Assembly (NCBI RefSeq): GCF_003704095.1
Contig: NW_020847607.1
Coordinates: 248,001 to 312,000, forward strand
Direction of reading: 5' to 3'
Length of the DNA stretch: 64,000 nucleotides
Source: Pocillopora damicornis
Lineage: Eukaryota
Shown here: positions 3,215 through 31,282 of the stretch, piece by piece
Layout: the number at the start of each line of letters is the position of its first letter
Position numbering within the stretch: position 1 is the stretch's first letter
Program-made: the position numbers and the translations under genes
The notes under the pieces: model-generated
Seen by the model: the letters and a program-made list of their open reading frames with translations, nothing else
What the model was told of the DNA's origin: nothing
The model's database searches: none

Positions 3215-6200
3215 TCACGGCGCATGTGCCATCGTTAGCAGTTCCTTGAGTCTCATTAGAGCACAGTCTGCCGTGAGACGAGCCTCGGGGTCTGGATCCC
3301 AACATTCTTGTACTGTCTGACAGAACGTTTTTAATCCCTATGTAATTGAAAGATAATAAATTATCAGTAAATACGATTGTTTAGTCATTTACAAATGATA
3401 AAGGATTTCCGGCCAAGTTCTAACTGCTACCAGAGCGGTACGATTTTATAAAAATTTCATGATCTTATTTGGCAGAGGGAGACCGGAAAGGAACAGTCAA
3501 AAAGCAAATTATTGGGGAGGGGAGGGTGATAGTGCTGGTGGATTTTGACACTCTGATCTAACTTTAATCCAAAGTGATGAAAAACGAAAGAAGAAAATGT
3601 CATTCTGCTATATGTAAAAGATGGCACCAAAATGTGGTCGACGGTTAACAAAAAATGACACACCAAGAGAATCATTTGTAAAAAATTCAAATTTGCCCCA
3701 TAGCGGTAGAAATAATTCAAAGAGGAAGAATTGGGTTTCTTTACCTTGATCTTTAAATTGATCGAACGCTACATGTACTCTCAGTTATTAATTGTTTTTG
3801 TTTTTTTTTTTCAAAGTCTTTCCTTACAATGCTGTTCAAAGCAAAGAAAACAGTTTTAATTGTATAACGAAAGTCATCCGTATTTATTATAATAGATCAC
3901 GGGAAATGACCAATCAGAACTCGCGTAATATTCAGTCCACTGAATAATTAACATATAGATTCCATGTCGCCGTGCGTTCGTTAAGTAATAGATCAGTACA
4001 GGCGTCAAAATAAGGTCAGAACTAAAAAGAGGCACAGGAGTGGGTAGCCGCGTGTATCACCGATGTGCTTGCCACATTTTGGCGTCCCTCGGTCATCTAT
4101 AACTGTACAGACACACGTCAAAATGGAATCTACTTGTTTTAAATGATGAAAATGCAAAATGTTGTCAATGGTGACGTCATCTACGCCTCTGTCTTCTAAC
4201 AGATAATGAGTAAAAGCCAATCGAAAAATTCGTGTGTACAAAATCAGCTTATCATACAAACATTGTTAGAGAGTAATATTACATTCTGTGATCAAACCTT
4301 ACCTCGTGGCTAGTGCATGGAAATTGTGGCCTGCACTGCTTTAGGGCAACAACTTCAACCATAACACTCAATGTTGCATCGGAATCAACCACTTCCCCAA
4401 ACGGTAGCTTATAGGAACCTGGGCTATGATCTGAAAGAAAATGGACCACAAGATTTCCTTTTGTTTTCGATAACAGTAAAAGAACCACGTGCAGTCAAAC
4501 TCGGTTTGTAATTATACGAGTGATTCACATGCTCGGAGGACCGCGAAGCAGGAGTCTGACTTACTACTCACGAGAATGATCACGAACAGAGTTGGACGAA
4601 ACAACGAGAACGAATGGCGCTAACTTTCAAATCACACAGGCATGACGCTTAAAATGTCCGCTTACATTTTCCAATTACAAGCATGGCTTGCGCGCTATCA
4701 TATTAATAATGGTAATAGGACTAAGTGGAGTCCAATTCGGTCTGCAAACATAGGAGTGACTAAAAAAGCGGACGACCACTAATACTTAATAATGACAATA
4801 GGACTGAGTGAAGTTCAATTCGGTCTGTTATCATACGAACGATAAACAAAATCAGACAATTTCGAAGCAGGAGTCCGATTTGTCAATCACGAGTATGATT
4901 ATAGACAGAATTGGACGACGTCACACAAAACAAATACATTTAGGACAAACATCTCCGGTACAGACAATGTCCTAAGTAAAAAATTCCTCCATTTTGAAAA
5001 TTCCCTGGCTTTTTTCCTTTTTTTTTTTTTTTAGGATAAGTGGTTGTTGTTATGGTTATTGTGATCAATTCAGTGATTGGTGGAGTAAGTTGAATGGACC
5101 TAATATGATTGGCTGCTTTAACTGTCCGATTACAGGTATCCGATTACAGCCAACTGTCCAATAACACTGTTCGATTAAAACTGTGCAGAATGATTAGAGA
5201 AAAATAAAGCAGCTGATGCATCAATCACATTTGAGGAAATTGTAAAGGCTACGATTGGTGCTGAAATCGGGTTACTGACCGATAACACAGCCTGTACCAA
5301 TCACTGAGCTGGGTCGTCGCCCGAGACCGCCATCTTGAAAATCGAGAACGGGACAAATATGCCCGAAGACAACATCGTTCTTAATTTTTTTTTTTCGATT
5401 TAGGAAAGAAAATTTACATGTTCAGCATAGGCTTGAAAAGTTACCTTACCTGCAACTGCGCACCGTGAAACAATCTCCCAAAGCACCAGTGCCATAGAAT
5501 AGACATCCATTTGTTTAAAGGTTTCTGTGCTGTCCAGGTCAACCGTGGTTAACAGTTCCTCAGGGGACATGTACCTGTATGTGCCAACTTGCATCTGTCA
5601 AAGTCAGACGAGCAGCAATTTGTTCTGAGTTAGCAGGAATAACAAGATATTGTACATCTTTTTTCCTAGGAAGGCCCTGAGAACGAATTTAAGTACTATA
5701 AACTCTCTAAGAGACCCTCATCTTGAAATCTGAGCCACCCTCCCGTCTCTCGCCCATAAGCCCTCTCCTTTTCATTCCGTTCTCCTCAAAAACTACAAAA
5801 TATAATATTTATTGCCATTTGTTAGGGTTTTGAAGTAGTCTCGTACCCAGACCTTCCATGGCCAAGTGGTTACAGTTGCACGGTAGGATCTGGGAAGGAG
5901 ATTGCCTTGGTAGTTGGTACACTACGCGTGGAATGATGGGAGAGTCTTTTTACCCAAACATAACGCACTGCACCCCCAGTCGCCCTTCCTTCCGCCTTCA
6001 GGCACTCTTTAATAAACCTCCCTACCTTTTCGCTTCCATCTTCGATACAACCCAGAGACAAAGCCAAGCCAAAGTCGGAGATAACGCTGGTTCCATCTTT
6101 CCTCACCAAAATGTTCGTGCTTTTTAAATCCCGATGGGCGACAGCAACTTTCGCGCGACCATCGGGAAAGCTTTCCGATTGAAGAAAGGCAACTCCGTTT

Positions 6201-9200
6201 GTTATACCGCTGGCCAAGAAGATTGCTTCATTCCAACTCAGTGTTTTCTTCAGCAGATATTCTCGAAGTGAACCATTCTCGCAATAATCTATGGCTAACC
6301 AAAGTGGTTCGTCTTTTCCTCCCAGAAATTCATTGTAAATTAGCTTAGAAATATTTGGATGATCTCCAGATAATAACTCGTAGATGGCACGCTCTTTCTG
6401 CCAGGACAATTTGGTTGCCTCTAGATAAACCTTTACAGCAACAGGCTGTTCTTTAATGCGACCCTTCCAAACAGTAGAATATCTTCCTTGGGACAACACT
6501 TTCTCTAAGCTTACAAGCCCTCTCTCTCCCACATCTGTCATAGTTCTTTGAGCATCCAGTCCGGTCACAGAGGAAATTTCAACCAGGTCTGATAACTTTG
6601 AATCCACAGAATGGTTGCATTTACGAAGGCGATTTATCAGCCCTGCGATAAGAACTGATATCAGCACGGCAGTGACACTGATCCACGTTATTGTAGAGGT
6701 GTCTTTACTTGATTTCTTTTGTATCTCAGGTTCTGGCTTTCTTTCCTCTTTCTTTCTTGATAAAACTTTTGGATGAGTAAGATTCCCTAAATATAAAAAA
6801 AAAATTAAAAAAACCGAAGTGAGATTATTTTAGGGCTGAGGGCGTAAATCTGAAATGATAAACAAGTGCTCATCTTCACATCAGATTCTGGTGGCTATTT
6901 GTTAAACAACCGTTTTCTTAGGCTGAACTGAAAAAAGATGCTATTTAGCACCATTCGAGAAAAATGTGCACTGCTGAGAGCCAATCAGATTGCAATAATC
7001 ACTAATGATTCCAAAATGCATTAAATAAAGGCCGAAATCTCATGGTTAGATGGCGGTCTCACCTCATACTACTAATACCACGACATCCCCTCTAAAGTCT
7101 CTATGCCATGGAAACAAAAGGAGTTAAGGGTGCCGTGACTGAATCTATCCCTGGTCCAGATATATTTCTGTTTTCCAGTAAGCGCTTCAAAGAATTATGG
7201 ATCATAAAGCAATTTTCAATTTAGTGGCGAAAGTAACCCGAGATTGTTTTCGATTAATGAATTCAGTCAGTGGTTTGTCTACAAAACTCGCGCCATCCTC
7301 TAAACCCAATCAGGCACAAAACGAAAACTAATCGTAACTTGGTCACCCGCGTTTTCCCGCGATTTTGATAGTTGTGGCTGCTTTTAATCTGATTGTTCAT
7401 TGGCTAATGATGATGTAAGCCTTTTTATGATTGGTCATTGTGATAACTTAGCTTTGGTTTTGGTTTTTTGACAGGCAATTAATTGAATACTGCCCTAACC
7501 AAAAATTGTTTGAGAGCTTTTTAGTTTAATAAGTTATCCCTCCATTTCAAACTCAACAGAAAGAAAACTTTGCTAAAAGAAATAATCTCAACAAAAGTCT
7601 TGTACTCACGTGTTTGTCGCAAATTTTTCGGTTTCATTCTCCTGAAAACTTGTTTTATATTTTTTATGACCGGCTCTATTGGATTTCTGTTACAGTTGCT
7701 GCCCTGACACAAACAAGTTCTCGTTCCGTTTAAAATCTTTGACTCACACTTCGCTTGGTAATGAGAGGAATTGGAAAAAGGGGGAAGCGGAAAACAACTT
7801 GTGAACATCGACAGCTTTTGGCCTTTCCAACGCCATGTTGCAAGGCATAAGTCGTCTTCTCTTCTACAGAGTTTTGTTCGACCGCAGTTGCTCTCACATA
7901 CACCCGTTGTCTTGTTACAATGTGCCAAAGATTTCCGACAAGATACACAGGAGCGACTGCAGAGTGTGGTTGTAATGTCTTCAAAGTTAACCAGGAAAAA
8001 AAAACAGTGTGCTTGTAAATTAGTTGGAAAAATTGCGACTCAGTTAGCATGATTAACCATTTACACCCTAATATCAGTATGTATATTCTCCATACTGATT
8101 TCCAGACATTTCCTAAGGTGTTGCCAAGGAGAATTTGTATAATGGTCAAGAGCTTGTGTAGTTGGTGATCATTTCCTTTATTCTCGTGACCTTTTATGTG
8201 TGATTCAGGGATGATGTTGTCAGAAGGAATTAGATTCTAGTCTTTCTTAGGGGTAAAAGGGTTAAGAAACAACGATACGTGTCAAGAGATCAACAATCCA
8301 AACACTCTCCACTTTTTCTACGCCCCTCCTCCCCTGAAAATTTCCCATTATTAGGAACTTAAGGGTGCGACCCCCAACCCCCTCCCTCCCCCCTACAGAC
8401 AAACGTGGACGTCGTGACATACGAATCGAGCACAGCAAGGTCCATACGTCAAATATTTCCCCGTCCAGTTCGACGAAACTCAGTAAATATGTATTTGCGT
8501 GTGACTGTTGAGTCTAAGGCGAACGCGCACCACAAAAAGATTCAGCAATGAAAAAGAAAAATTTCCTGCTTTCTCATCTCTTTCCTATTTTAAGCCTAAC
8601 TGTGCAATTAGAATTCGCCTTCTTGGAAAATGCAACAGAGCCGTGCTAGTCCCGAGCCCATGGCCGGGCGGCTTTTCCGGCCCGCAACTCATGTCAATTT
8701 GTCCGGCCCTGCACCCCTTAACTCTCATTAAAGTTTTCTATAGCATTGCGTGTGGGGGGCCTGTGTGCCGCGCGACAGGAGTCATATGATTAATTCAACT
8801 TAAGAGCTGCATGATAAATGTAACTTTAACTGCCGCTGTCTCCGCAATTTTATCGATTATCCTATACACAAATATTAGAATACTATGTTGTAAACAATTG
8901 TTGTGAAGTTAACAAAACCGGCGAACCTTGGCCCTGGTATAAACTTGTGACGAGAGAAATGAAAGGGGTAAGTTTTTCAAGAAGCTGTGGTGCTGCGTCG
9001 GTGGGGAGTACACGAGATAATGTAAATTGTCCACGGTAGAGAGCTTTTGAAGCTGATGTTTCGAACGTTTGCCCTTCGTTAGAGCGAAACATTACATCAG
9101 AATGAAAAACTCGAAAGGTCAGCTTTAGACTCTCTCTTTGTGACCAGAAAGGTTTTAAAAAACTCTTCGAAGTTACTTAAGAGTATTCTATGATACCCAT

Positions 9201-9320
9201 AGGCTAGTAACAAAATAATAATCAGAAATCCATCTTGCACGAAAAATACGACTTACCCAAAGCCAATATGAGTACTGTAAGAAAAAAATGCTGTGTAAAA
9301 TATATTTTTACATTTCCCAT
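3215..9320 (-). CDS. TGFBR2: TGF-beta receptor type II-like serine/threonine kinase receptor, 6 exons, 529 aa
   Basis: Exons 9320-9257 (signal peptide [21 protein letters not shown]), 7978-7610 (ectodomain with the 12-Cys TGFBR2 spacing, [27 protein letters not shown]), 6786-6026 (TM plus kinase [15 protein letters not shown]), 5594-5450 ([28 protein letters not shown]), 4430-4303, 3337-3215 ([13 protein letters not shown]..stop). All GT-AG, phases 1,1,0,1,0, total 1590 nt. No GS box, hence type II. Confidence 0.9.
4488..5280. repeat. Dispersed repeat with internally reiterated degenerate copies in TGFBR2 intron 4
   Basis: Three degenerate versions of taataggactgagtggagtccaattcggtctg..atacgagtgat (about 4488, 4710, 4795); a related reverse copy lies near 56740-56850. 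Boundaries approximate. Confidence 0.55.
8053..8265. mobile_element. TTAA-flanked MITE (piggyBac-like ends)
   Basis: Starts ttaaccatttacacccta, ends taggggtaaaagggttaa (inverted termini, TTAA both sides); related copies elsewhere in the window. Confidence 0.7.
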
Positions 9321-11799
9321 TGCGATCAGAGAGTAGCAAGTGGTAGTACCTGTCTTAAAGAAAGAAAAAGAAAAACACGCTACCCACATTGCGTCCGGTC
9401 TGCGATTGTGAATTAATTTCCCCTTGATATGAATTTCATGATACGCAGTTTAGAGAAAGAGTTACTTGTTTTTGTATTCAAAAACACCTTGTATACTTTG
9501 TATTTACGCTTGATAACAGAAATAATTGAGCATTATATCGCAAGCGTGTAGCAATAATTAACCATCAAATGGAACTATTAGTAGGCGCATTGGTGCTAAT
9601 TAGAACCGGTTGCGCACTGACGCTAATGCGAAATGCATACATAGATCATTATGCCTCGAAAAAAAATCGGGCTATTTTCTCTTCAAATACGTTCTCATTT
9701 AAGACAAACTTTTGCGGTCTGTTTGGACTATCTGGTTGGACTAGAACTTTCCTCTATTTTTTCGCCTTTGTAAAGCACAGCGTCTCACTTTTAAACAATA
9801 ATTGTTATGGTCATTAACACCATGGTTTTGGGAACAAAGCGAAGGATTTGGCGCACACGTGTTCTATTTTCTGAGTTTAGGTGGACAGTGACTTTCGCAC
9901 AGCGGCCCCTTTGCAGCCACACAAGTTCACACAGTTTTTTTCATTTTGAAATTTTTTATAAAACATCGGGCTAACCATCCAGCAGAGATAATTTTTAAAT
10001 ACTGCCTATTAGAAAGAGGTTAAATTTTTTTGCATACGGCCAATTTTAATGCATCATTAAAACATAGGGCACGTGTTTATAACAAAATCTACATTGCAGG
10101 AGTATCATATGACTCGAGGCAGAAAGTTATTCTGTCTAAACAATTCGAAAACAACCCCTGCTGCTTTTCTTTCCTTGTCATGTTTTAATAAGTATGGAAA
10201 CAATTTTTTCTAAACTCTATGCGTAAGGTTAATTTTCAGGAAAAGCTTGAAATGTTAATAATCACCCGAGAGGTATACTTTCTTTAAAAGTTCCCCATTG
10301 ATAGCTTTACTAGATTCAAAAACGTCACTTTAAATATGGTAACCTTCTTGTAGCAAGGCAAAACTCTCTTATTTGTGATAAACATGAAATTTGATTGCTC
10401 GGGTTAAACTAAACGCAAAACATGATGTGATCTGAACTTCGAAAGACATGAATTAATTTTTTTTATCAATAAAATTTACAGGCAGGGGTCTTATTTTAAA
10501 AGGAAATGAAGATTAGCATTTAGAAAGTTTCCGGCAAATTAGTCCATGTCTGCTGTGGCTCTAAGATCAAATGAAATTTTAAAGGGATCGCTCTTTACTG
10601 AAAATGATCTGAATTGTAAATTGTGTCTCCATATACGCCAAGTAATCCGGTGAATTAAGATGCAAACTTATGATTAAAAGTGTTATGCCGACTTTACCCA
10701 ACACATGTGCGTGTGGTAATAAAAATTCATGAAACAGAACTCCAGGATTAAGGGATTGGACAAAAAAATGCATTAAAACCTTGTCTGGTTCATCTGAAGA
10801 CACAACACAGGAAAGCATGTGTGCGATTTGTTTGGCATTTCATGGGAGCGCAATCAAAATAAAACTGATATCCGCTGAGAGACACATCATACGTAAAATG
10901 GCCTTTGGAACTGTCCGGTGATAGTTCTTTGTTAGCACTGTTTGTTGATGTGGCACGGAAGCAATTGATATTTCGATATGTCGAAAGGAGCGGTGGATAT
11001 GGTCGGTGAAGAAAGACTATTTTGGTTGGATCTGATGGTCGCAGCGGCAACTCAGTTCTGTTTCACAATGAACACGGAGTTTACGCAAGAAACAATCATA
11101 CTCTGGTGACACGAAACAAACGAGGTTTAAGGTTGGTGAAATTTGTTAGTTCAGCCCCTCTATTCTTTAAAATGCTACGTTAAAATGAACCTAACCATCA
11201 ACAATAGAGATAACAAGCGGATGTGGCTCTGATTTTATGATTTTAGTTGTGACGCGAAGGAGAGTCGGGAACAAACGTAGTACGTGAACAGCACATACTT
11301 AGAGAACTTGACGATCGCGAGAGTCACGCGTCGCGCGCGGACACGGGCTTAAGTCCACACAAACTCCACGCTTCTAAGAGGCTAATGAGCAACACTAAGA
11401 CACAAGAAGGATCAAGATGTTTAATATTTTACAAGTGGGTCGGTTCCAATTTCCATACGACAGAGAACAATTCCTAGCTAATCACACGTTTTATGTTTAT
11501 CAAAAGTTCCTCTATGTCCCTTTTTTTCTTCGTTTTATGAAATGTAACGACATGTACTGTTAGACTTGGAAAGATCGTAACGTCGGTGATGTCAACAAAG
11601 CTATTGGTGTGCATAGTGTATATCCCGGGCGCTTAATCGAGGTGCCCTTTAATCGGGAAGAGAGAGAGCGCTGTTGACTGTAAAATAATGTCAGATTTAC
11701 GGCGGACTAGGAACGTTTCGCGAGGAAAGCCAAATCAATTCTTATCATTGGTTTATGGGTAGTTACAATCAAAATACGGTGAAAGTAAGCCATTCAATA

Positions 11800-12014
11800 T
11801 TAAAGAGATATAGAAGGATTCGAAATCAGAAGTGTCCAAATTCGGATCGGACGTACCCGAAATCAGATCGGGGCTTCCGAAATCGGACGAAAGTGTTCGA
11901 AACAGGACGGCGGCGTCCAAAATTGGGCAGAAGGGTCCAGATTCAGAGGAAAATTTCAGAATTCGTTTATAGACCTTTGCCAAATCGGAGGGAACGTCCA
12001 AAATCGTGCTAATT
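11800..12014 (+). repeat. Degenerate tandem array of a 20-bp palindromic unit (approx. GTCCGAAATCGGACGGAAGT)
   Basis: cgaaatc-like cores recur at 11858, 11878, 11898, 11918, 11938; homologous to the reverse complement of 51665-52090. Confidence 0.75.

Positions 12015-17045: not shown

Positions 17046-17048
<3 letters not shown>

Positions 17049-17081
<33 letters not shown>
17049..17081. repeat. (TA)n microsatellite
   Basis: About 16 uninterrupted TA units. Confidence 0.95.
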
Positions 17082-17084
<3 letters not shown>

Positions 17085-18150: not shown

Positions 18151-18174
18151 GTTGTTGTTGTTGTTGTTGTTGTT
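18151..18174. repeat. (GTT)n microsatellite
   Basis: Eight GTT units. Confidence 0.9.
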
Positions 18175-19820: not shown

Positions 19821-19916
19821 AAACCTGTCAATCAAGCACCACACGAAGTAGCATACGGGGTTTTTAGTTTTCCACGCTTTGGAAAGTTTCGGTCAGTGAG
19901 AGTGTTATACGGAGAT

Positions 19917-22900
19917 ATGAATGTTTGCAATTTTGTAGTGTTTTTTCTGCTATCGTCGGCTGTACACTGCTTAGGTAAGTAAAGAGGGTTTCCAAAGGGA
20001 TTGTCTTAAGTCCTGCATTGTCAGATTAAATCTGATCTGGAATGCTAACTTTCCGAAATGTCTCCAATACGTGAGCTTAGGCGGTAGAACAGAAATCTAT
20101 GCCTTTTTTGTCCACAAGGACATATCTGCTAAATGGTATCCCGGTTTTTCGCAGATCATAGCACGCAATCTACTCATTCTTTGGTTGAAAGGGAATCAGA
20201 ACACTCCGGTGGTTTTTTTCGTTGTTTTTGGACGGTTTGGTCAATGAATTTTGTCTCGTTTCAACCTTGTTTTGGTGCTTACGACGAGAGATGTAGGAAT
20301 CGTGACATGCATTGGAAATTACTGAGTACCTTGTTGTTTACATGTTTCACTATTGATAGCATCTTCTTGTCCAATACTTCTATTCCTCTCTCAAGCTTAC
20401 TAATTTTTTTTTCAAATTAAGGAAGAATTTGAAAGAGTTTTCAATATTTTCGACTGTTTAGAAACATTTGTTGCCGTAAAGTACAGGCTTACTAAAGGTT
20501 AAATGTTGTGACGAGTTGTTTGACATCAATGTACACGGGAACTTCAATTAGTAGAAATCGCTTTCAAGAGAAGATTTTAATGGCCTGCAATCGTAGCCGA
20601 TGACGTGTAATTTTCCTTTAAATTCTTTCTTAACCCCTGTCCATCGTAAAAATTTTTGTATCTTTTTTTTTTTTAGGATGCAATATTCCACCTAGTGACA
20701 TAGTAAGTCGTTCGCATTCGAATTGAAGGTCATTGTTAATGAATTCACAAAACAAAAGTATTCCGTTGCGTTCCTTTTACATTGCCCTCGGCTTTTTATA
20801 GATATATCTTTTTTTTTTCGTTTTTATTTTCCTTTTCTGGATACCCCAAAAAAGCATAGCCATGCTTCCTTGACTTTTCTTGCAAGCGTCTGTCTGCGAA
20901 GACCCTTTTCGAGATTTGTTTGTTTTCCTTCGATTCGCGTACTTTCATAAACAAATGTTCGTATGATTTTGGGCACGCTTATCGAGTTGCCATTTTTTAA
21001 ACCACAAGTTATTCAATACATTAAACTAGATTTTTTTCAAAAATATGCTTTTGTGATACAAGTTCCTTCGACAATGATCGCTTTTCAGAAAACGTGACTC
21101 CAGTAATAGTTGGTTGGCAAAGCTCTAATCGACAATATTGACTTAAGAACAACAAAGTGAGGCTTGCCTTTCAATTGTACATGGTTTAACTAGGTGCATG
21201 TCGCTTTTTAAGCCCTCGTGAATTTGTTTTAATATCCCGAATCCGGAAAATCCTAGCCGACGTGCCCTCGTGTCAAATTTACCTCGAACTTGAGGACCGG
21301 TATGTTATACGTAACCGATGTTGAATAACGTGAGGCCGACTTCTTTCCAAAGTTTTTAATATCGATTGCTACTGTTTTGAAATGTAAAAATAGCTCTGTA
21401 CCTTTCAGTTCGGATTCGTTAGTTTCCGAATATATTAATAGCTTGTCTGTACAGTCTTCAACATCAATAATCCCTTCTTAAAGCTCTAGTATTGCAGTTT
21501 ACACCAAACGTGTGATGATTTTTTAAACGTTATGCTACGAGATTGACGAGGGCAGCTGCGATGACCCTTCTGTAGTGATCTGTGTATAGAGCTTTGATTT
21601 GACACAGTGTGAATCGGTAAAACATGTTGCAATATACGGCTGAAAGTGAAAGAGGAACGTGTAAAACTAGTAACAGAGGGTTTTTTTTTGAGTAATTTGC
21701 CTATAAATTTGTCGGTTTTTTTTTTGTTATTTTACTTCCACAATATATGTATCATTCTTTTATTGATGATCAGTAATTAATACTTCTAAAATGCAGAATG
21801 AACCGTTTTTAATATTATCTCCCATATGCACATTTTCTTGTGTGAAAAATGGACTACACTCAAGGCTGCTTTGTTGCATCAATATGTTGCATTTTTGTTT
21901 CATGGGTCAGTGTTCTTTTGTAGGTGTGCAAGTAAATAGCTCACAGGTTTTCAGCCTTGTGTTTATAAAAATTCCCAGATCTTTAAAAAAACGGGAAAGG
22001 TTTTAATAAAAGATGTCCTTAGATGGACATAATTAAAAACAAAGCCAGGTGCATCACAAAGAACAGTACAATAGTATTGAAAAGATATTGTGCAATATCT
22101 GTACAATTGCATGCCTGGATGTTTCTGCCAGTGAAGCATCACCCAGAAACTGTTACAGTAGACTTTTATAATTTTTGATTAACTTCATTTAGAAAAATTG
22201 TTTTTTGAACAATGTTGTTTTGCAATTCTTGTTATTTGAGGGGAGAGTGTCTCAGTACCAGTAAATGAATAAGCAAGCTTTATTAACTTAGCAGAGTTGT
22301 TTATTTAATTAGTGTTTGAGAAGTCCACGAGGGCTCATAAATTAATTGTTGTTAACAATTCAAGATCTTGCGCAATTTGCCCAAAAGTTTCTCAGCAGCA
22401 TGTGGCTTTTGTTCATTTTGTTGCATTAGACAGCTGCGCCTGTTTGAATTCTATAAAACAGGTGAGCAACGCAACCCTGAAACCCCTGAGTATCTGTCAC
22501 ATAGTTCTCCATTCTTACGAGGTGCATTTCTTGGTTGCTGGGAGAATCTAGTGAGCTATCAAAATAGCAATCTTAAGCTGATAAGTGTGTCTTCACCTGT
22601 AGTAGAATAAAATATTCAAATTCAGAGGAGAAGTGACATATTCCATGGGTGTGGTCTCACCAAAAAAGGCCTTTGTACTGAAATAGCAAATTCACGTGTA
22701 GTCACAAAAATTATAATCGCAGTTAATCATACTCAGACTTGCTGTCTTATCCACAGGTTAAATATGAGTTATATTATGCATTAGTTATATGTTATCAGAA
22801 TCCCTCAGCATTTTAACAGTGATCTTGCTCCTTACATGTTGCTTTATAGCAAAGTGTGTATCATATGTCGCTGAGGGACTATTATGAAATGTTTGCAAGA

Positions 22901-25900
22901 TGTCCATTGTCTTCTGTAGCGTCACAACAAGTATTGAAAAAATAATATCTTTGGTTCTATTGAAAATAGTTCACTAATTCAAAGTTTCTATGATACACTG
23001 ATCAAATTTAATGGATTCTTTTACAAGGCTGCAACACAGGCAGGTGAAATTAGTTTGAATATAGCATTACAGCAAACACTGAGAAAACGAAAATTTTGAG
23101 ACATGATTCTTTCTTTAATTTATTTTAAAATGGAGTCAACAGTGGCACTGCATTATTTCTTGGCAAGGGAAGCTAAATTGAAATTTACTAACAAGCAAAA
23201 ACTCTATGAAAAGTTGACCAGACTACAGTGGTGAACAAACAAACAAATCCACTAGAAACTCAAGATGATCAACTGATATGCGATCCTGCTTAATCACCAG
23301 TTTTTACATTGCTCATTGGAACGAACAATGGCCACTTCATAATAGAGAAAACAATTGCTTAACTCATTCATATTAATTATTCAAACACATCTGAAAATAG
23401 AGATGTAAACTCATCTATCAAAACCAGTATGTGTATGGTCTTATATGTGTACTATGTGCATTTGACTTGTATATCTTGGTCCCCTTATCTCTGAACTACA
23501 CTGTGCATGTTCACTGGCTGAGAAAGGGTGGTCTAGATGGCTTAAGGTCATGACTTAGATACTGAGTCCTCTGAGGCCTGTACAGCATGAGCAAAGGCCA
23601 AATAGTTTTGTGTCTGGTTTAACCCAACTCAGATTACAAGCATTTTATCACGTAACTGCTGCCCTTTCTCCATCACCTTTATTATCTCTTTCTTCTGTCA
23701 GGGCCCAAATGCTTTCTTCAGCCCTGCACAGTCCATATTGTATTAGACAAGCTGGCTTGAATCAGGCCAAAATGATATACAAGAGTCTTTAAGGAATGCA
23801 TCTCTCTTATCTCTCTATGCTTTGTTTTTACTTTGGTCATCCTTGCAATTTTTTATTGATATATACATGTAAAGCCTTCTTCAAATTACTGCCTCATTTT
23901 ATAAAATGTGGTTGTCCATTCTCGATACACTTAATAGGAAATCAATTTTATGTCGAACAAAAAGTTTACATTCCTATTTTGCATTCTGTTGGGTAATGAA
24001 GTGCACTCAATAGGCTTAACATTATAGTTTTTTCTTAAAATTCTGTCAAATAGTCCTGATACAGTCATAAGTCCCATTAGTTACCCAACATACTGTTAAA
24101 TAATTCACAATTTGGATCAAAACCTGTATTGGCCTTTCTTTACAGGAGATCCCAAAAGAGATGGAAAAAGCCCTCGACTGGTGTGTCATTTCTGTAGCAA
24201 GTCTAACAGCAGCCAAAGTGATTGTACATGGATCAACACAACTTGTGATGAGACAAGCAAATACTGTTACACAATGTGGATAAATGACTCTTTAAGTAAA
24301 GGAGGGGTACAACGCGCAGGGTGCTGGCAGCAAAATGCAAACTGTGAAGATTCATTGTGTTTGGGTGAGAAGACACATAATGGGAAAGGTTTTTTCTTTT
24401 GCTGCTGTAATGAAAATCTTTGTAATGGGAATTTCAGTTTACGCCCTGAGACAACAAGATCAACAGTAACTTCTGAACCAAGTAAGTTGAGAATTGAAGA
24501 TTTTACTATCCATATACTTAATGTAACTTAAAACCTCTCATGAACCAAATTTATATGAATTATTTGAACTCATATTTTCTGAAAAATTAAATCCTGGAAC
24601 ATGTGAGAGGTGATGCGAAAAAAATATTACACAAAAAGCTATTAATAAGCAAGGACTAGTAAAGAAAGTTCAATCTGGATTAAGAATGGATATATTTGTG
24701 TTGATCTATGATTAAACCTACGAACATCGAATGGTGGCATGATGCACATTTCTTGTTTGTTGTAACTCATTTTGTTGATCAAAGGGTTGCAATTTATCTA
24801 CATGTACACATATCTTCTCATGCCATTAAGAACCAAGTGTGCCATTAAGCCAGTGTGATTGAGACCTCATGCTTGAAATCAAGGTTATAGTGATCAGTTA
24901 GTCTAAGATGGCGCCCAAACCCTGAAATAGAACAGCATCTGGAAAGAAGCGACACAAACAGTGTGCATTCTCCCAGTGTCAAATGCAATGAATAAATTAT
25001 CAAGGTGTTGTAATCTCCATCATGCATGACCTTTGCGTCTGCCCTCTGGTGGCAAACAGGTTTGCCCAGGAAATCTTTGTGTCACTTAATATTATCATTA
25101 TTTAAGTGTACACTTGGGTTCAAGTGTAGTGGTTTTCTTATCATGCAATGTTAAATAAGTAACAAAGTCCTTTGATAAAAACTTCTTAGTTCTTAAATTT
25201 CAATGACACAAATATATGAAGTTGGTTTCATGTAGTGATTTTTCCCTCCATTTACATTGAAAACAAGCATGTGAATTGAGAAATATAAAAAGGAGAAGAG
25301 TTCATGGGTTAAAGCCCAAGAAGCCTGAGGCAGAAATGAAATAAAATTTGACAAGGAATGACAAGAACATCTCGCTGAAATGGTTATGAGCTCATACTTA
25401 ACTCAGTCTTGGCTGCTAGCAACCAATCAGCAGTCATCAAGAAAAGGTCTGCCGCAGCAGGTCCAAGATGCCTGCAACTTGAGAAATTGAAATTGCCGGC
25501 AAGTGCAATTGTGCCTACAGGCTAAATTCCACTTGCTAGCGGGTAAGGCTTCTAGGTAGGTTTTGTTATACACGATAACTGCAAGTTCCCCCAAACTTTT
25601 TGTCTGTTGAGAGTCTCTTAGGACTGCCTTGGATGGTTCTGTGTCTGTGTTTCTTTCGACTTTTGGCATTTGTAGCAGCCAGGGTGTTGAGAGAAGTTGG
25701 CGCTTTGTCACTTAAAGACATGAAATGTATGAAAAACTTAAGATTGAATTAACTTCTTTTGTTTTTGCACTATTGTGATCTTTTAAACAAATTATTAGGA
25801 TGTGAAAAGTTAACAGATTGCATTGCAATTTGGCTGGATTGCTATTTTAAAATGCCAACTGAAAAAACTGTGTTTGGGATTTCAATTTGGTGAAAAGAGT

Positions 25901-28900
25901 CTCCTGCAATGGCCAGTGGTAAATTTGGGGAGGCAAACTTGACAGGAAATTGCATAACAGGATTAACCCCTGTAAGTGGAATTATACAGAGGCCCTATCA
26001 GTGTGGTCGGATATGATAGCAGATTAGTTCACTCAAAGAGATACTGTCAATTTCTGATTTGTTCTGCCTTTGTGAATTTCAAAACAAGTTTTGCCAAAAT
26101 AGCATATGCCATAACCTTTCAATTGATGTTTAGGCATTTGTGGTGACACTTAAAATGGCATGTGAACAATTTAAATCACAAAGGACATGGGAAAGGTCTA
26201 CCACATCTTAAACTGGGTAAAACATGACTGAGAAATTATCACTTTCCGTGGAGAACTCAAAAGGATTCTGTGTGCTTTGTGCTAAGATATGTTGTAGTAC
26301 TAAACTCACTGGTTGTTTGTTGAAATACAATCATGTAAGCGAAATGGCTGTCCATTGTACTCGTAACCTGTAATTTACGAGTAGAATCCAGTTAAAGTCG
26401 ATGAAATAAAGATTTTTGGCTATGGTGACCTAAACAGTCCCAGTTTAGAGCCCTGTGCAAGAGTTATTTTCACTCGTGGATATAGGAAGCATAGGAATGA
26501 AAGTAATGTTGGGATTTAATATGCAAATTTTGTGATGTTAGCAGAGCAAGAAACTTTCTTTTCAAGTCACTTGTCCATTTGAACAAATGTGTGTTTATTT
26601 TACAACCAAAAGCTTACTAATCTGCAAAATGTCAACTAGTGGATCAGACGTGGAATTCACTCATAAATTAATGGTTTAACTTTGCATAAAAAATTAGACA
26701 CATGTAATGCACACAAATTGTTAATAACTATCTGTAAGCTGTACTTATTTTTATTTGTAGCAAAGATACACCCTCCTAGTTAAGTGATCGCAGTAGCATG
26801 TCACTCCCTACCAACAAATCAACTTGAAAGCTCTGTATGTATATACGAAAACAAGATCTGATGTAGAAAAATATGTCTGCAATGGGTTACTTTTTCTGGG
26901 AAATCTTGATCCATCATCATTGACGCCAGAAGGTCCCACTGTCCCATTTGTTTGCCATTTCAGGAGGCAAGATAACCTCCTGGCACGGTGTGAGTCATTT
27001 GTGAACTTTTATGGGCTAAAATCCTGCATTCGCTTTTGGGATGGATACAACCACTTTGAGGGAATTTATAGGGTGTATAGATTTACAGATTTTTGTCAAA
27101 TTTCGCCAAAACATTCCAGGGATAATGACAAAGTGAAGCATGTTGGGAAGTTTTGATATTTGAAATATTTGTCCCTTGGTGTTCAATTATGCAACACACC
27201 TTGCATATTTTTCACTACTCCAACTTAAGATGCTGATATCTAGACAATCAATCAAAATGTCATAAAGCCTGACACTCTTTTGTTGATTGATGCCTTGGGA
27301 ATAAGACTATGCAGCCATTTTGCTTGTGCTGTGGCATCTGATACCCAATTGATTCAACAGAAGAACCTTTGGTCATTTCACGCCTTACCAGCTTCTGACA
27401 CTTCTTTAAAGGAAAAGTTGCTTAAATTATATTTTTAACGTAAACAGCAGTTTGCAAGCTTTCTTCTGATGTACAATTTGCTAGGATATTAGTGAAACCA
27501 GCACACATTCAAATTTTTTCCCAAATGACACCTGCGAAGGTGGGAAGTAACCTCAATAGAGGTTCTGTTGTATTTAAACTTTTGCTCTTTGTTCTCAACA
27601 GTAACTACAGGAGGAATAATACAATATACCAACAAACCTTCAAAACCTGACAGGCGTGGCCCCACATACACACTGTTGTATTTAGTGGCTCCAATTTTTG
27701 TAATAGCAGTTATCCTGATAATTGGGTTTTTTATGTATCGCCGCCACAAAACACCATTTCCGACCCGTATCCTGGAAGAAGAACTTCTCAACTCAATCCC
27801 TCCACCATCCCCAGAGCTGGGCTTCAGACCCATTCAGCTTGTGGAAGTCATTTCACAAGGAAAGTTTGGCACAGTATGGAAAGCGGATTATCTCGAAGAT
27901 GTAGTTGCTGTTAAAGTTTTCCCAATGGCCCACCAGACTGCCTGGGTCTGTGAAAAAGATATCTTTACAACTTGCAACTTGAAACATGAAAATATTCTTA
28001 AATTTGTTGCGGTAGAGAAGCACAACAATGGCTCATGCTCTGAGCTGTGGTTGATAACAGAGTATCACGAGCATGGATCTCTTGGCGACTATCTTAAGAG
28101 CCATGTAGTAACGTGGCCAGAGCTGTGTTCAATGGCAGGAAGTATGGCTAATGGCCTTGCATATCTGCATACAGAAGTATTAGAAAGTTCTTTCAAACCC
28201 TGCATAGCCCACAGAGATTTCAAAAGTAAAAATGTGCTGGTCACAAAGGATCTAACCTGCTGTTTGTCTGATTTTGGACTGGCAATGAAGTTTGACTCTG
28301 GTGGGGATCCAGGGGAGACACATGGCCAGGTGAGTTAGGCCTCAGTGAGCTGCATAGCTTGTAGGCAAACAGCATAGGCAGCTAGGCAAAGGGAGCAGTG
28401 GGGCTACACTTGAGAGGACTTNNNNNNNNNNCCCCCCAATTTTTGTTTCTGGATATTGCTAGTGTAGTATACAATTAGTGTGGCAAAGCATTTGGTTTTA
28501 TTAGGGTTGTGCATCAGCAAAGTCCTATTTAGTATAATGTTTTTTATCATAACAGCTCTGGCCTGAGTTCTAGTAGGAAACATAAAAATGTTTTGGTAGA
28601 TTTGCATAAGGGTATGCATGCAGCTTGATATATGGAATGACCCTCCTTTGCAAAATCATTCCAGTAGGTATGATATGTGTATCATGGAAATTTTAAGGGA
28701 AATTTTTTGGTTGAAAAGAGAGCATTTTACTGATTTAATCAGTGACTTATGCCCAAAAGAGATGCTGAATTTGCAAAGTGAGCAAGCTGCAAAGTATGAT
28801 ACTTTGCCCTATTCAATGAAATAGAATGCTGAAATACCCTAAAACAAGTGATAACAGAATATCAAAGGGGTGGTATGATGGAATATCCTAAAATGCAGAA

Positions 28901-31282
28901 TTCCTTGTTGTATGAAGCAAGAAACTAACAAAAATGGAATTCCATAAAATATTAACATGAAAAGAAGCATTGCTTAATCACTATTAGAGCCTCAAGGATT
29001 GGGGAATCATGAGGCTTTCTAGCTATGTCTTTAATTTGTTAAGATATTACTATTGCTATCATTATTATTATCATTGTTAATATGATTATGGAGATGCTGC
29101 AGGTTTTCTGTTTTGCACATGAATACACTACCTTCTAGCATCACTATACTGTATGCTACATACAGTATAATGCCACAGTGCTATAAAAATTGTGCAATAT
29201 CAGTAGCCACACACAGTCTGACTGTCTATTTTTACAGGTTGGAACAAGACGTTACATGGCACCAGAAGTACTTGAAGGAGCCATCAGCTTCACAAGGGAG
29301 TCATTTTTGTACATTGATATGTATGCCTTTGCTCTGGTTCTTTGGGAGTTGATGTCCAGATGTACTGCTGCTGATGGTGAGCAAATCCATGAATACTGTA
29401 CCAGTATATTTCTCAGATGGCAGCTCATCTTCCAGGATCATTACTTTAATTAACCCTTTACACCATAACATCAGTATTGATTTTCTTCAGACTCTTCTTC
29501 ATGCATTTCCTTTGGTGTTGACAAGGACAATTCGTGTAGCAATTAAAGCTTCTTGGGTTGGCGATCATTTCAGTTATTGTCATGATGATATTAAATGATG
29601 TGGCAGTATTGCTGTGAGGAGAAATTAGATGCTGGTCACTCGTTGGGGTCAAAGAGTCAATTTTTATCAGTGAGGGTCAAAAGATCATTTATTTCATTTG
29701 ATTATGATCAGATTTCTTAATGGGAACAAAGAACCTGCAGAAATTTGCCTCACTACCAACATGTGGCTTTACAGCTCAGTTGGTTGAAGCATCCAACTGG
29801 TATCTGGATAGCATGAGTTCCTAAAGCCGGAATATTTTTAGCCTTATAGCCTACAAATGAGGATCTTTTTTTTAATTGAGCATTATGCGCAGTTCACAAT
29901 ATGATTTATTTCAATGGGTTGGAATATTATAAATACTTTATTTCCACATGCCACAAAGAGTATTTTTCCTTGGTTCTAAAGTGGAGAATATTTTTTTGTC
30001 AGGTCCTGTTGATGAATACAAGTTGCCATTTGAAGAAGAAATAGGATCACATCCTTCCTTAGAGGACATGCAACAAGTTGTAGTACAGCAAAAGATCAGA
30101 CCTAAATTCCGACCAGACTGGTTTGTCCACTCGGTACAAACATTTACCTTTTACTCTCTAACACCAGAGAATTTAAGAAAGATGTTTTTCATCTTGTCAC
30201 GAGCATGGGACAAATAAAAATTCTGAGTCCCCATGAGGAATCAAACTTCAGACCTTCGGATGGTCTGTATCCGAAGGTCTGAGGTTTGATTCCTCGTGGG
30301 GACTCAGAATTTTTTTTTTGTCCCACGCTCCTGACAAGACGAAAAACATCTTTCTTAATTCCTTACCGAGCTCAAAAACTTACCATCTCTATTATCTCTA
30401 TCAACACCAGAGAATTTGTTCGACAATCAAAAGCTTCTTTAGTTGGTGACCGTTTCCTTTATTTGCATGACCTTATTATTTGATTCAGGGGTGATACTGT
30501 GTGGAAAAATGAGATGCTAGTTACTCTTAGGAGTCAAAGGGTTTTGTAGCATCCCTTTGGTGGTTTCAATAACATGATACAAATAGGTACATGCAGTGAG
30601 AATAGCAGGCAGCTAGTTTTGAAGGCCTTGAGAATCTCCTGTTCCACAGGAGATGCAGATTCCCCATGGAAAGTTTGAAGTTCTGGACTCTTTCTGTGGC
30701 ATTTTTCTGCATTTGGAGGTCCATTTAAAATTAAACATGCGGTTTTTGATAATAGTGAACAGTTTAAACCAGAAATCTTACTTGAAAGAAATCAGTTTGA
30801 ATTTAAGATGCTATCATTTGCATGGTATAGTTTTGTCAAGATTTTAAATCAGGATTGGTTTAGAGAAACTGCAGATAAGAATTTTTTTTTTTTTTTTGAC
30901 AATCAGGAGCTTCTTAAAATGTTCATCATTTTCTTCATCCTCTACCTTTATATTTGGTTCAGTGGTGATACTTTAATGAGAAATTAGAAGCTAGTCACTC
31001 TTAAGGTTTAAAGTGTTCAGGGAGTTGTGGTATTCATAAAAATGTCTCAGAATACTAAATGATTGATTGTTATTTTGTACCTAGAATATGGCGAGCCTTC
31101 TTCAAACTATTGAAGAATGTTGGGATCAAGATGCAGAGGCTAGGTTAACAGCTCAGTGTGTCGCAGAAAGGTTATCTCAATTCAACACAAATTCAAGCTT
31201 CGATTTGGCGCATTCTCCCACTGTTACAACAGTAGTTAACAACACCAACATTACTCCATCTTCAAAAGAGTCATCAATATAA
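19917..31282 (+). CDS. ACVR2: Activin receptor type II, 6 exons, 529 aa
   Basis: Exons 19917-19974 (signal peptide [19 protein letters not shown]), 24146-24481 (ectodomain [19 protein letters not shown]), 27602-28329 (TM, PPPSP, kinase [20 protein letters not shown]), 29238-29376 ([23 protein letters not shown]), 30003-30133 ([19 protein letters not shown]), 31085-31282 ([16 protein letters not shown] stop). All GT-AG, phases 1,1,0,1,0, total 1590 nt. Confidence 0.95.
29450..29660. mobile_element. TTAA-MITE family copy in ACVR2 intron 4
   Basis: ttaaccctttacacc start, degenerate ggggtcaaagagtcaa end; body similar to 8053-8265. Confidence 0.65.
29735..29910 (+). mobile_element. Degenerate tRNA-derived SINE-like fragment
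   Basis: A-box-like cagctcagttggttgaagcat within an intron; no intact cloverleaf. Confidence 0.45.
30175..30402. mobile_element. Fold-back tRNA-SINE insertion with 15-bp TSD
   Basis: Flanked by aacaccagagaattt at 30160-30174 and 30403-30417; about 87-bp inverted arms around a 7-nt loop; arms match the SINE at 60744-60864. Confidence 0.8.

What the first reader, a model, noticed from the sequence alone, without database searches (positions are those of the whole stretch)
3215..31282. Head-to-head pair of two different type II receptors with identical exon architecture
Seen: TGFBR2-like (minus) and ACVR2 (plus) diverge from a shared 10.6-kb interval; each has 6 coding exons, phases 1,1,0,1,0, with introns after the signal peptide, after the ectodomain, and at the same three kinase positions. 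Established: human TGFBR2 and ACVR2B both lie on 3p, megabases apart. Inference: this may preserve the ancestral local duplication that generated TGFBR2 from an ACVR2-like gene, possibly kept together by shared regulation.
Basis: partly seen in the sequence, partly recalled or inferred. Interest (0 to 1): 0.8.

Follow-up and report, generated by a model that had tools for sequence, protein, structure and literature searches.

The report
Coral TGFBR2–ACVR2 divergent receptor gene pair
A stony coral carries a true TGF-beta type II receptor gene back-to-back with its activin type II receptor gene, an arrangement shared by several other corals. The third type II receptor gene (BMPR2) lies only about 97 kb away, so corals may preserve the old local gene cluster from which these receptor families arose.

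Summary
Gene A (minus strand, 9320-3215) and gene B (plus strand, 19917-31282) are two intact type II receptor kinase genes. Each has six GT-AG coding exons, phases 1,1,0,1,0 and a 1590-nt CDS. Their ATGs are 10,596 nt apart. One correction: intron 3 of A lies two codons upstream of B's.

The N gap (28422-28431) sits in intron 3 of B. The exons on either side abut exactly in three orthologous coral proteins.

A belongs to the TGFBR2 family by ectodomain, C-lobe and tree. An AU test rejects a coral-only ACVR2 duplicate (p = 0.028). B is a clear ACVR2.

The same divergent pair, 14-18 kb between the large exons, stands on long contigs of three other assemblies. One is Oculina-like and one branches below the named stony corals. 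Contig lengths suggest three more.

The ancestral-duplication reading is plausible but unproven:
- A BMPR2-like gene lies about 97 kb away, with a GULP1-like gene between.
- Amphioxus has TGFBR2 and ACVR2 on one chromosome.
- However, amphioxus has no ACVR2 within 10 kb of TGFBR2.
- Porites evermanni has a WD40 gene upstream of A.
- The tree does not make TGFBR2 and ACVR2 sisters.
- BMPR2 and amphioxus TGFBR2 share most of the intron positions.

The scan had already noted the TGFBR2-type gene on this same stretch.

The parts
9257..9320 (-). Gene A (TGFBR2-like) exon 1: ATG at 9320, signal peptide, donor G|GTAAGT, phase 1
   Evidence: Read directly. The ORF and the phase-1 donor are conserved in L023, L024 and L022. 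Spliced RNA contigs did not lay on it.
7610..7978 (-). Gene A exon 2: TbetaRII-type cysteine-rich ectodomain, phase 1 at both ends
   Evidence: Pfam PF08917 scores 27.8 bits against a cut-off of 25. All PDB hits below E = 0.01 are TGFBR2 ectodomains, best 4.6e-05. The first ESM Atlas hit is a TGF-beta receptor type II cluster, score 0.90. The RNA joint 6785/7609 confirms the donor.
6026..6786 (-). Gene A exon 3: stalk, transmembrane helix, juxtamembrane region and kinase N-lobe up to the activation loop. VAVK, HRD and DFG are intact and there is no GS motif.
   Evidence: Pfam Pkinase hit. PDB search. RNA contigs cover 6026-6785, with joints on both sides.
5450..5594 (-). Gene A exon 4: kinase C-lobe ([12 protein letters not shown] ... 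[15 protein letters not shown])
   Evidence: Best PDB hit is TGFBR2 at 2.9e-14, against TGFBR1 at 3.7e-10 and ACVR2B at 8.5e-09. RNA joints at 5594/6026 and 4430/5450.
4303..4430 (-). Gene A exon 5: kinase C-lobe
   Evidence: RNA contig piece 4302-4430. It maps next to exon 4 and exon 6 in the Stylophora orthologue P0003.
3215..3337 (-). Gene A exon 6: [13 protein letters not shown] motif, short tail, stop TGA at 3215-3217
   Evidence: Best PDB hit is TGFBR2 at 3.9e-08, against BMPR2 at 1.6e-06. RNA contigs run about 400 nt beyond exon 5, outside the stretch that was laid.
9321..19916 (.). Interval between the two ATGs (10,596 nt). No Pfam-recognisable ORF in the three largest ORFs tested. Conserved non-coding blocks at 9199-9605, 10716-10918, 13380-13531, 14346-14427 and from 19491 on are collinear with the sister assembly.
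   Evidence: blastn against L023/L029, L024/L032, L027 and L028. Pfam scan of the intergenic ORFs found nothing.
19917..19974 (+). Gene B (ACVR2) exon 1: signal peptide, phase 1
   Evidence: Read directly. Conserved in L023/L029, L032 and L028. The surrounding 19.5-20.8 kb is 72-80% identical across stony corals.
24146..24481 (+). Gene B exon 2: activin-receptor-type ectodomain
   Evidence: Pfam PF01064 scores 20.5 bits, just under the 20.9 cut-off. It maps to the ectodomain of coral ACVR2 proteins.
27602..28329 (+). Gene B exon 3: transmembrane helix and kinase N-lobe up to the activation loop
   Evidence: PDB hits: ACVR2B 2.6e-58 and ACVR2A 5e-57.
28422..28431 (.). Assembly gap (N) inside intron 3 of gene B
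   Evidence: The flanking exons abut in three orthologous proteins.
29238..29376 (+). Gene B exon 4: kinase C-lobe ([10 protein letters not shown]...)
30003..30133 (+). Gene B exon 5: kinase C-lobe
31085..31282 (+). Gene B exon 6: [13 protein letters not shown] motif, tail ending KESSI, stop TAA at 31280-31282

Best explanation
Two intact, separately promoted type II receptor serine/threonine kinase genes lie head to head.

Gene A is the coral orthologue of TGFBR2. It has a TbetaRII-type three-finger ectodomain, one transmembrane helix, no GS box and an intact kinase. I infer that it binds the TGF-beta sensu stricto-like ligand encoded elsewhere in this genome (C1732) and then recruits and phosphorylates a GS-domain type I receptor.

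Gene B is the coral ACVR2, which I infer serves activin- and BMP-type ligands.

The pairing is old. It is shared by several stony-coral lineages and by one assembly that branches below the named ones. The split between the two gene families predates the cnidarian-bilaterian ancestor. The third family, BMPR2, lies about 97 kb away on the same scaffold.

The most likely history is that type II receptor genes multiplied by local duplication, with an inversion, on one ancestral chromosome. Slowly rearranging coral genomes kept the copies close together. In amphioxus and human the copies remain on one chromosome but have drifted apart.

Shown: gene structures, family membership, conservation of the pair among corals, and the linkage. 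Inferred: the duplication mechanism, the ligand assignments, and any selective reason for keeping the pair together.
For: Gene models and phases. RNA joints for introns 2-4 of A.

TGFBR2 identity of A:
- Pfam PF08917 above its cut-off.
- Every PDB ectodomain hit below E = 0.01 is TGFBR2.
- Exons 4 and 6 match TGFBR2 best.
- The first ESM Atlas hit is a TGF-beta receptor type II cluster, score 0.90.
- In a word search with the Stylophora orthologue, every named non-coral hit shown is a vertebrate sequence, nearly all called TGFBR2.
- In an IQ-TREE analysis the coral clade (100) is sister to deuterostome TGFBR2, SH-aLRT 91.
- An AU test rejects coral A plus coral ACVR2 as one clade (delta lnL 34.8, p = 0.028).

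ACVR2 identity of B.

The same divergent arrangement, from record coordinates:
- ERZ25067556: A exon 3 at 683350-684195 (+), B exon 3 at 668370-669119 (-).
- ERZ25067872: 640458-641186 (+) and 621460-622119 (-).
- ERZ25071792: 829207-829968 (-) and 845845-846705 (+).
- Equal contig lengths for A-type and B-type ORFs in three more cases: 754533, 442437 and the Oculina record of 33308145.

Wider linkage:
- A BMPR2-like gene lies at C4242:375.8-380.1 kb.
- A GULP1-like gene lies between ACVR2 and that gene.
- Amphioxus TGFBR2 and ACVR2 sit on records of equal length, 19482894.
- Human TGFBR2 is at 3p24.1 and ACVR2B at 3p22.2.

Ligand:
- A TGF-beta s.s.-like mature domain in this genome matches TGF-beta2 at 1.6e-36, against 1e-18 to 1e-20 for GDF11 and activin.
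- The complex model of that ligand with A's ectodomain scores 0.72, best of 3 controls 0.03. This mark was reached by 51 of 78 solved complexes and 2 of 108 mismatched pairs. The runs agree in at least 93% of contacts and the partner's pLDDT is 85.
Against: - No ACVR2 exon lies within 10 kb of amphioxus TGFBR2.
- In Porites evermanni a WD40 gene ends 3.6 kb upstream of exon 1 of the TGFBR2-like gene. Its P. damicornis orthologue is on another scaffold.
- No A-type exon was found within 10 kb upstream of ACVR2 in Porites lutea or Orbicella. That flank is too short to be decisive.
- The tree does not resolve the order of the three type II families.
- Tandem duplication normally gives head-to-tail copies, so an inversion has to be assumed.
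- The exon architecture is shared with BMPR2 and so says nothing about this pair in particular.
- The complex model may simply recall the solved TGF-beta/TbetaRII complex. Its interface does not include the stretch that aligns with the human receptor's ligand-binding strand. The two acidic ligand-contact residues of human TbetaRII align with R and N in the coral (alignment; residue numbering from my memory).
- Exon 1 of A is not confirmed by RNA.
Confidence: 0.55

Rival explanations
1. Secondary juxtaposition. TGFBR2 and ACVR2 are ancient paralogues that merely shared a chromosome. A rearrangement in the stem of stony corals, or of hexacorals, brought them head to head. On this view the pair is not a relic of the duplication itself.
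For: - The head-to-head orientation is not the direct product of tandem duplication.
- Amphioxus TGFBR2 has no ACVR2 within 10 kb.
- Porites evermanni shows that this junction can break.
- So far the adjacency is shown only within one anthozoan group.
Against: - Two specific paralogues becoming immediate neighbours by chance among the many genes of one chromosome is improbable (my inference).
- The third paralogue, BMPR2, is also only about 97 kb away.
- Human ACVR2A is at 2q22.3. BMPR2 at 2q33 and GULP1 at 2q32 are from my memory. Together they mirror the coral order ACVR2-GULP-BMPR2.
Confidence: 0.3
2. Selectively maintained regulatory unit. The pair is held together because the two genes share enhancers or one chromatin domain. 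This can be true alongside either history above.
For: - The whole interval is collinear between P. damicornis and the sister assembly, with conserved non-coding blocks and no inserted gene.
- The spacing is similar in three assemblies: ATG to ATG is 7.8, 10.4 and 10.6 kb.
Against: - The ATGs are 10.6 kb apart, so this is not a bidirectional promoter.
- The strongest conservation lies next to each gene's own first exon.
- No expression or chromatin data were examined.
- Porites evermanni tolerates another gene next to A.
Confidence: 0.15
3. Coral-specific duplicate. Gene A is a fast-evolving, lineage-specific copy of the neighbouring ACVR2 that only resembles TGFBR2.
For: - Within this genome, the best paralogue of A's exon 3 is gene B (41% identity, 1.4e-28).
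- A's N-lobe matches BMPR2 and ACVR2 slightly better than TGFBR2 in the PDB.
- A evolves fast: 72% identity to Stylophora and 43% to Porites.
Against: - The ectodomain is TbetaRII-type by Pfam, PDB and the ESM Atlas.
- The C-lobe exons match TGFBR2 best.
- The tree groups A with deuterostome TGFBR2.
- The AU test gives p = 0.028 against a coral A plus coral ACVR2 clade.
Confidence: 0.04
4. Assembly artefact. The two genes were joined wrongly in this scaffolded assembly.
For: The window contains five N gaps, one of them inside gene B.
Against: - No gap lies between the two genes.
- Three independent long contigs from other samples show the same order and orientation.
- The interval is collinear with a related assembly.
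Confidence: 0.01

Closest known systems
Vertebrate and invertebrate-deuterostome TGFBR2 (TGF-beta receptor type 2)
   Same: - TbetaRII-type ectodomain with the same cysteine pattern.
- No GS box and an intact kinase.
- C-lobe signatures [15 protein letters not shown] and [13 protein letters not shown].
- The three C-lobe introns, with the same phases as in amphioxus TGFBR2, and one large exon running from the transmembrane helix to the activation loop.

   Different: - The cytoplasmic tail is much shorter.
- The N-lobe is divergent.
- The two acidic ligand-contact positions of human TbetaRII align with R and N (alignment; numbering from my memory).
- Intron 3 is shifted two codons upstream.
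- The gene lies next to ACVR2. In human the two genes are at 3p24.1 and 3p22.2.
ACVR2A/ACVR2B (activin receptor type 2; Drosophila punt)
   Same: Gene B matches human ACVR2B and ACVR2A over the kinase at 2.6e-58 and 5e-57. It falls in the ACVR2 clade and ends in KESSI.
   Different: It has six coding exons. My memory, not checked here, is that human ACVR2 genes have about eleven. It is partnered head to head with TGFBR2.
Ancient paralogue clusters kept from tandem duplication (for example Hox/ParaHox or Wnt1-6-10 clusters)
   Same: Members of one gene family whose split predates Bilateria still lie close together in a slowly rearranging genome.
   Different: Only two or three genes are involved. 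The orientation is divergent. Conservation is shown so far only among corals. No shared regulation has been demonstrated.
Bidirectional-promoter gene pairs
   Same: Divergent orientation.
   Different: The ATGs are 10.6 kb apart, and each gene has its own conserved promoter-proximal block. A bidirectional pair shares a promoter of under about 1 kb.

Membership tests
TGFBR2 (TGF-beta receptor type 2) | TbetaRII-type ectodomain (Pfam PF08917) | tested here: met
   Pfam score 27.8 bits against a cut-off of 25. Own-genome scan: 26.1 bits, the only hit in the genome. The twelve PDB hits below E = 0.01 are all TGFBR2 ectodomains. First ESM Atlas hit is a TGF-beta receptor type II cluster, score 0.90.
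TGFBR2 (TGF-beta receptor type 2) | Type II layout: signal peptide, one transmembrane helix, Ser/Thr kinase, no GS box | tested here: met
   Exon translations. The PF08515 scan of the genome hits only C905 and C2137, not this locus. VAVK, HRD and DFG were read directly.
TGFBR2 (TGF-beta receptor type 2) | Kinase domain groups with TGFBR2 rather than ACVR2 or BMPR2 | tested here: met
   FastTree support 97. IQ-TREE SH-aLRT 91. AU test p = 0.028 against grouping with coral ACVR2. Exon 3 alone is ambiguous.
TGFBR2 (TGF-beta receptor type 2) | Binds a TGF-beta sensu stricto ligand | tested here: inconclusive
   The genome encodes such a ligand. The complex model scores 0.72, best of 3 controls 0.03. 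This mark was reached by 51 of 78 solved complexes and 2 of 108 mismatched pairs; the runs agree in at least 93% of contacts and the partner's pLDDT is 85. A like complex has been solved, so the pass may come from memory. The human contact residues D32 and E119 (numbering from my memory) align with R and N.
ACVR2 (activin receptor type 2) | Activin_recp ectodomain (PF01064) | tested here: inconclusive
   The exon alone scores 20.5 bits against a cut-off of 20.9. Orthologous full-length coral proteins carry PF01064.
ACVR2 (activin receptor type 2) | Kinase orthologous to ACVR2A/B | tested here: met
   PDB hits ACVR2B 2.6e-58 and ACVR2A 5e-57, ahead of the next family, TGFBR1, at 6.7e-48. Falls in the ACVR2 clade, support 96.
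Bidirectional-promoter pair | Divergent transcription starts less than about 1 kb apart | tested here: not met
   The ATGs are 10,596 nt apart. Conserved blocks lie separately next to each first exon. Transcription start sites were not mapped.
Deeply conserved microsynteny block | Adjacency kept across phyla | tested here: not met
   The adjacency is kept in four coral-type assemblies. Amphioxus TGFBR2 has no ACVR2 within 10 kb, although both are on the same chromosome. In human the two genes are on the same chromosome arm but at different bands. Sea anemones, octocorals, hemichordates and echinoderms could not be examined.

The most novel reading that the evidence does not exclude
Corals preserve, almost intact, the founding cluster of all three animal type II TGF-beta-superfamily receptor families: TGFBR2, ACVR2 and BMPR2 within about 130 kb. 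The cluster arose by local duplications before the cnidarian-bilaterian split. Its dispersed remains would be the TGFBR2/ACVR2B linkage on human 3p and the ACVR2A-GULP1-BMPR2 linkage on human 2q. This would also put a complete TGF-beta sensu stricto ligand and TbetaRII module in the cnidarian-bilaterian ancestor, contrary to papers that date it to deuterostomes or chordates.
Probability: 0.35. Interest if true: 0.65.

Novelty: new member of a known kind. Interest (0 to 1): 0.5.

Why it matters
Published inventories give Nematostella two type II receptors (PMC3169577, PMC2657120, PMC11846459). They also date the third type II receptor, and TGF-beta sensu stricto itself, to chordates or deuterostomes (PMC2657120, PMC11239237).

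This coral has a TbetaRII-type receptor that groups with deuterostome TGFBR2. It also has a TGF-beta s.s.-like ligand. The receptor gene lies beside ACVR2 and near BMPR2.

If the linkage is ancestral, it gives a concrete genomic picture of how the type II receptor families arose. The hypothesis can be tested directly on chromosome-scale assemblies. It also gives coral biologists a defined receptor candidate for the TGF-beta pathway implicated in symbiosis and immunity.

If the adjacency is a later coral-lineage event, the result is an ordinary, well-conserved gene pair.

Tried and rejected
- Spliced proteins: I built and searched none. Every search used single exons or open frames by reference, or natural orthologous proteins returned by the tools.
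- Exact look-ups of the Stylophora and Oculina TGFBR2-like proteins found no record.
- Ten-kilobase flanks upstream of ACVR2 in Porites lutea and Orbicella were too short to reach a TGFBR2-like gene at the P. damicornis spacing. The Orbicella locus also holds 10.4 kb of N. This absence means nothing.
- Walking along the ENA contigs through called ORFs was dropped. Those ORFs start with GTG, so a translation by reference would not match the recorded product.
- Alternative first exons for gene A: scans up to position 40000 found only the 9320-9257 exon. An AAG|GTAAGC candidate at 16199-16025 is not conserved in relatives.
- An alternative exon 2 acceptor at 7956 was rejected because its phase does not fit.
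- An Rfam scan of 3000-32000 found nothing.
- The bacterial promoter scan is irrelevant for this organism.
- The intergenic ORFs at 15723-16199, 17415-17903 and 14289-14630 have no Pfam match.
- The species behind the ENA assemblies could not be named. Their clusters carry no names. In one tree ERZ25071792 falls outside the named stony corals (support 86). In another it falls inside them with weak support.
- Literature searches found no paper describing a coral TGFBR2 or a TGFBR2-ACVR2 linkage in invertebrates. The library does not hold every journal.

Full report
**Setting.** The window is C4242:248001-312000 of a 234.35-Mb, 4393-contig stony-coral assembly. I built and searched no spliced protein. 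Every search used single exons or open frames by reference, or natural orthologous proteins returned by the tools.

**Observation.** Open frames and Pfam scans show two receptor kinase genes on opposite strands. I placed the splice sites by hand from frames, GT-AG sites and phases.
- Gene A (minus): 9320-9257, 7978-7610, 6786-6026, 5594-5450, 4430-4303, 3337-3215.
- Gene B (plus): 19917-19974, 24146-24481, 27602-28329, 29238-29376, 30003-30133, 31085-31282.

Both genes have phases 1,1,0,1,0. By coincidence both also have a 1590-nt CDS (529 aa). The ATGs are 10,596 nt apart.

Poly-A RNA contigs from two studies carry joints at 6785/7609, 5594/6026 and 4430/5450. These are introns 2, 3 and 4 of gene A as modelled.

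Exon peptides of A map end to end on the Stylophora model P0003 (327|328, 375|377, 418|419). Those of B map end to end on the Oculina, Orbicella and Porites lutea ACVR2 proteins.

Introns 4 and 5 are at identical positions, but A's intron 3 (SEK|MQVGT) lies two codons upstream of B's (HGQ|VGT).

**The gap.** N 28422-28431 lies 93 nt downstream of the GTGAGT donor of B's exon 3, inside intron 3. Exon 3 ends and exon 4 begins at adjoining residues of three orthologous proteins: 376|377, 381|382 and 380|381. Nothing coding is missing and the frame is kept. I did not lay reads across the gap. The single reads call went to gene A, whose 5' half had no support from annotated orthologues.

**What gene A is.**
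- Its ectodomain exon passes Pfam ecTbetaR2 (27.8 bits, cut-off 25). This is the only such hit in the genome.
- In the PDB the ectodomain matches only TGFBR2 ectodomains below E = 0.01, best 4.6e-05, with the cysteines aligned.
- Its first ESM Atlas hit is a TGF-beta receptor type II cluster (0.90).
- Exon 4 matches TGFBR2 best (2.9e-14, against TGFBR1 at 3.7e-10 and ACVR2B at 8.5e-09). So does exon 6 (3.9e-08, against BMPR2 at 1.6e-06).
- The N-lobe exon is ambiguous, with BMPR2 at 2e-28 and TGFBR2 at 7e-24.
- NCBI names the Stylophora and Oculina orthologues 'TGF-beta receptor type-2-like'.
- A word search with the Stylophora protein returned corals and then only vertebrate sequences, nearly all named TGFBR2.
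- In an IQ-TREE analysis of 78 rows, the coral clade (support 100), together with one unnamed sequence, is sister to a deuterostome TGFBR2 clade. That clade holds Branchiostoma, Ciona, Saccoglossus, Antedon, Apostichopus and vertebrates, named. SH-aLRT support is 91.
- Forcing coral A and coral ACVR2 into one clade costs 34.8 lnL units (AU p = 0.028).

Gene A is therefore a TGFBR2-family member, not a recent copy of its neighbour. The order of the TGFBR2, ACVR2 and BMPR2 clades is unresolved.

**What gene B is.** It is a plain ACVR2. Its kinase matches ACVR2B at 2.6e-58 and ACVR2A at 5e-57. It falls in the ACVR2 clade with support 96.

**Is the pairing more than local?** Exon-3 open frames of both genes were found on the same long contigs of three other assemblies. 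Record coordinates give a divergent orientation each time.

| Assembly | A exon 3 | B exon 3 |
|---|---|---|
| ERZ25067556 ctg26016 | 683350-684195 (+) | 668370-669119 (-) |
| ERZ25067872 ctg20782 | 640458-641186 (+) | 621460-622119 (-) |
| ERZ25071792 ctg18891 | 829207-829968 (-) | 845845-846705 (+) |

- In ERZ25067556 the ATGs are 7.8 kb apart.
- The ACVR2 of ERZ25067872 shares a 90% cluster with Oculina patagonica. Its ATGs are about 10.4 kb apart.
- ERZ25071792 branches below Porites and the robust corals in the gene A tree. In one ACVR2 tree it falls outside the named stony corals with support 86. Its taxon is unknown.
- The whole interval is collinear between P. damicornis and ERZ25067556, with conserved non-coding blocks. 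The region around B's first exon is 72-80% identical across stony corals.

**An exception.** In Porites evermanni a WD40 gene ends 3.6 kb upstream of exon 1 of the TGFBR2-like gene. Its P. damicornis orthologue is on scaffold C371. The junction can therefore be broken or invaded.

**Wider linkage.** An own-genome search found a third type II gene on the same scaffold at about C4242:375.8-380.1 kb, on the minus strand. It is BMPR2-like (…LKETIEDCWDQDGDARLSALC…), has no GS domain and has an Activin_recp ectodomain. It lies about 97 kb beyond B's stop.

Between the two genes, at window positions about 55.5-60 kb, lies a PTB-domain gene. Its best PDB match is GULP1 (5.8e-14, against 2.7e-05 for the next hit).

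Human ACVR2A is at 2q22.3, TGFBR2 at 3p24.1 and ACVR2B at 3p22.2 (PMC8301451). BMPR2 at 2q33 and GULP1 at 2q32 are from my memory.

In amphioxus, TGFBR2 (P0502) and an ACVR2 isoform (P0054) sit on records of the same length, 19482894 bp. No ACVR2 exon lies within 10 kb of TGFBR2.

**Exon architecture.** The following introns are also present in the coral BMPR2-like gene and in amphioxus TGFBR2:
- the phase-1 intron between ectodomain and transmembrane helix;
- the phase-0 intron before VGT;
- the phase-1 intron after the SRC motif;
- the phase-0 intron ten residues before (E/D)CWD.

The architecture is thus the family's ancestral one. It is not evidence for a special A-B relationship. BMPR2 has two extra N-lobe introns, amphioxus TGFBR2 has one, and Porites evermanni's gene A has one too.

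**How it probably works.** A's kinase motifs are intact, and GS-domain type I receptors exist at C905 and C2137. The genome holds about 20 TGF-beta-family ligand loci.

One ligand, at C1732:126333-126632, matches TGF-beta2, -3 and -1 at about 1e-36. GDF11, BMP6 and activin score only 1e-17 to 1e-20.

A complex model of this ligand with A's ectodomain scored 0.72, best of 3 controls 0.03. That mark was reached by 51 of 78 solved complexes and 2 of 108 mismatched pairs. The runs agree in at least 93% of their contacts and the partner's pLDDT is 85. The model supports binding but does not show it. A like complex has been solved, so the pass may reflect likeness only.

**Open point.** The spliced RNA contigs stop fitting at 7981 and carry 27-153 further 5' letters that did not lay on exon 1. 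One contig reads on unspliced to 8089. Even so, exon 1 is conserved in three other species, with its ATG, hydrophobic frame and phase-1 G|GTAAGT donor. No other candidate first exon was found. The 5' end of the mature mRNA needs long-read RNA.

**Literature.** Inventories give Nematostella two type II receptors. They place the third type II receptor, or TGF-beta s.s., in chordates or deuterostomes (PMC3169577, PMC2657120, PMC11846459, PMC11239237). [quoted passage not shown] One paper suggests an ACVR2-like origin for type II receptors (PMC5979292). I found no paper on this linkage.

**Verdict.**
- The ancestral-duplication reading is the best available but is not shown.
- The exon-architecture argument fails as specific evidence for this pair.
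- Shared regulation is untested.

Noticed in passing
G000:C4242:375800-380100 (outside the window; L014 9606-9950, L015 572-4185): A BMPR2-like type II receptor gene on the minus strand, about 97 kb beyond ACVR2. It shares the ectodomain/TM intron and the three C-lobe introns, and has two extra N-lobe introns.
   Followed up: partly
window 55500-60000 (+): A PTB-domain gene whose best PDB match is the engulfment adapter GULP1 (5.8e-14), followed by a coiled-coil exon and a proline-rich exon. It lies between ACVR2 and BMPR2. From my memory, GULP1 also lies between ACVR2A and BMPR2 on human 2q.
   Followed up: partly
G000:C1732:126333-126632 (L041 1468-1803): A TGF-beta sensu stricto-like ligand with nine cysteines and the CCLRSLYVDFRKDL motif. 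It matches TGF-beta1/2/3 at about 1e-36, far ahead of activins and BMPs.
   Followed up: partly
G000:C3758:213000-218300 (L018 7651-8679, L018 9744-9998, L019 945-1340): A receptor-like gene with HCD in place of HRD and GLG in place of DLG/DFG, so possibly a pseudokinase. Two Activin_recp-like ectodomain exons lie upstream of it.
   Followed up: no
window 8052-8193 (intron 1 of gene A): A short repeat with RNA-contig depth of 1200-10000 in all four libraries and many loose ends at its borders. It has no Rfam match.
   Followed up: no
window 8393-9399 and beyond: Low-depth unspliced RNA contigs, about 96-98% identical to the window, run through exon 1 of gene A and into intron 1. They could be pre-mRNA, DNA carry-over or a separate transcript.
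   Followed up: no
L022 1-3999 and 9929-12235 (Porites evermanni): A WD40-repeat gene sits directly upstream of the TGFBR2-like gene. The large exon 3 is split by an extra intron of about 1.6 kb just before the catalytic loop. The ectodomain exon is partly duplicated around an N.
   Followed up: partly
L027 32464-37776 (Porites lutea): The downstream neighbour of ACVR2 is an Exo_endo_phos gene. If they correspond, that neighbourhood may be conserved between Pocillopora and Porites.
   Followed up: no
G000:C1425:354272-369349 (L044, L045, L047): Three TGF-beta-family ligand exons lie in tandem within 15 kb. Two of them are nearly identical.
   Followed up: no
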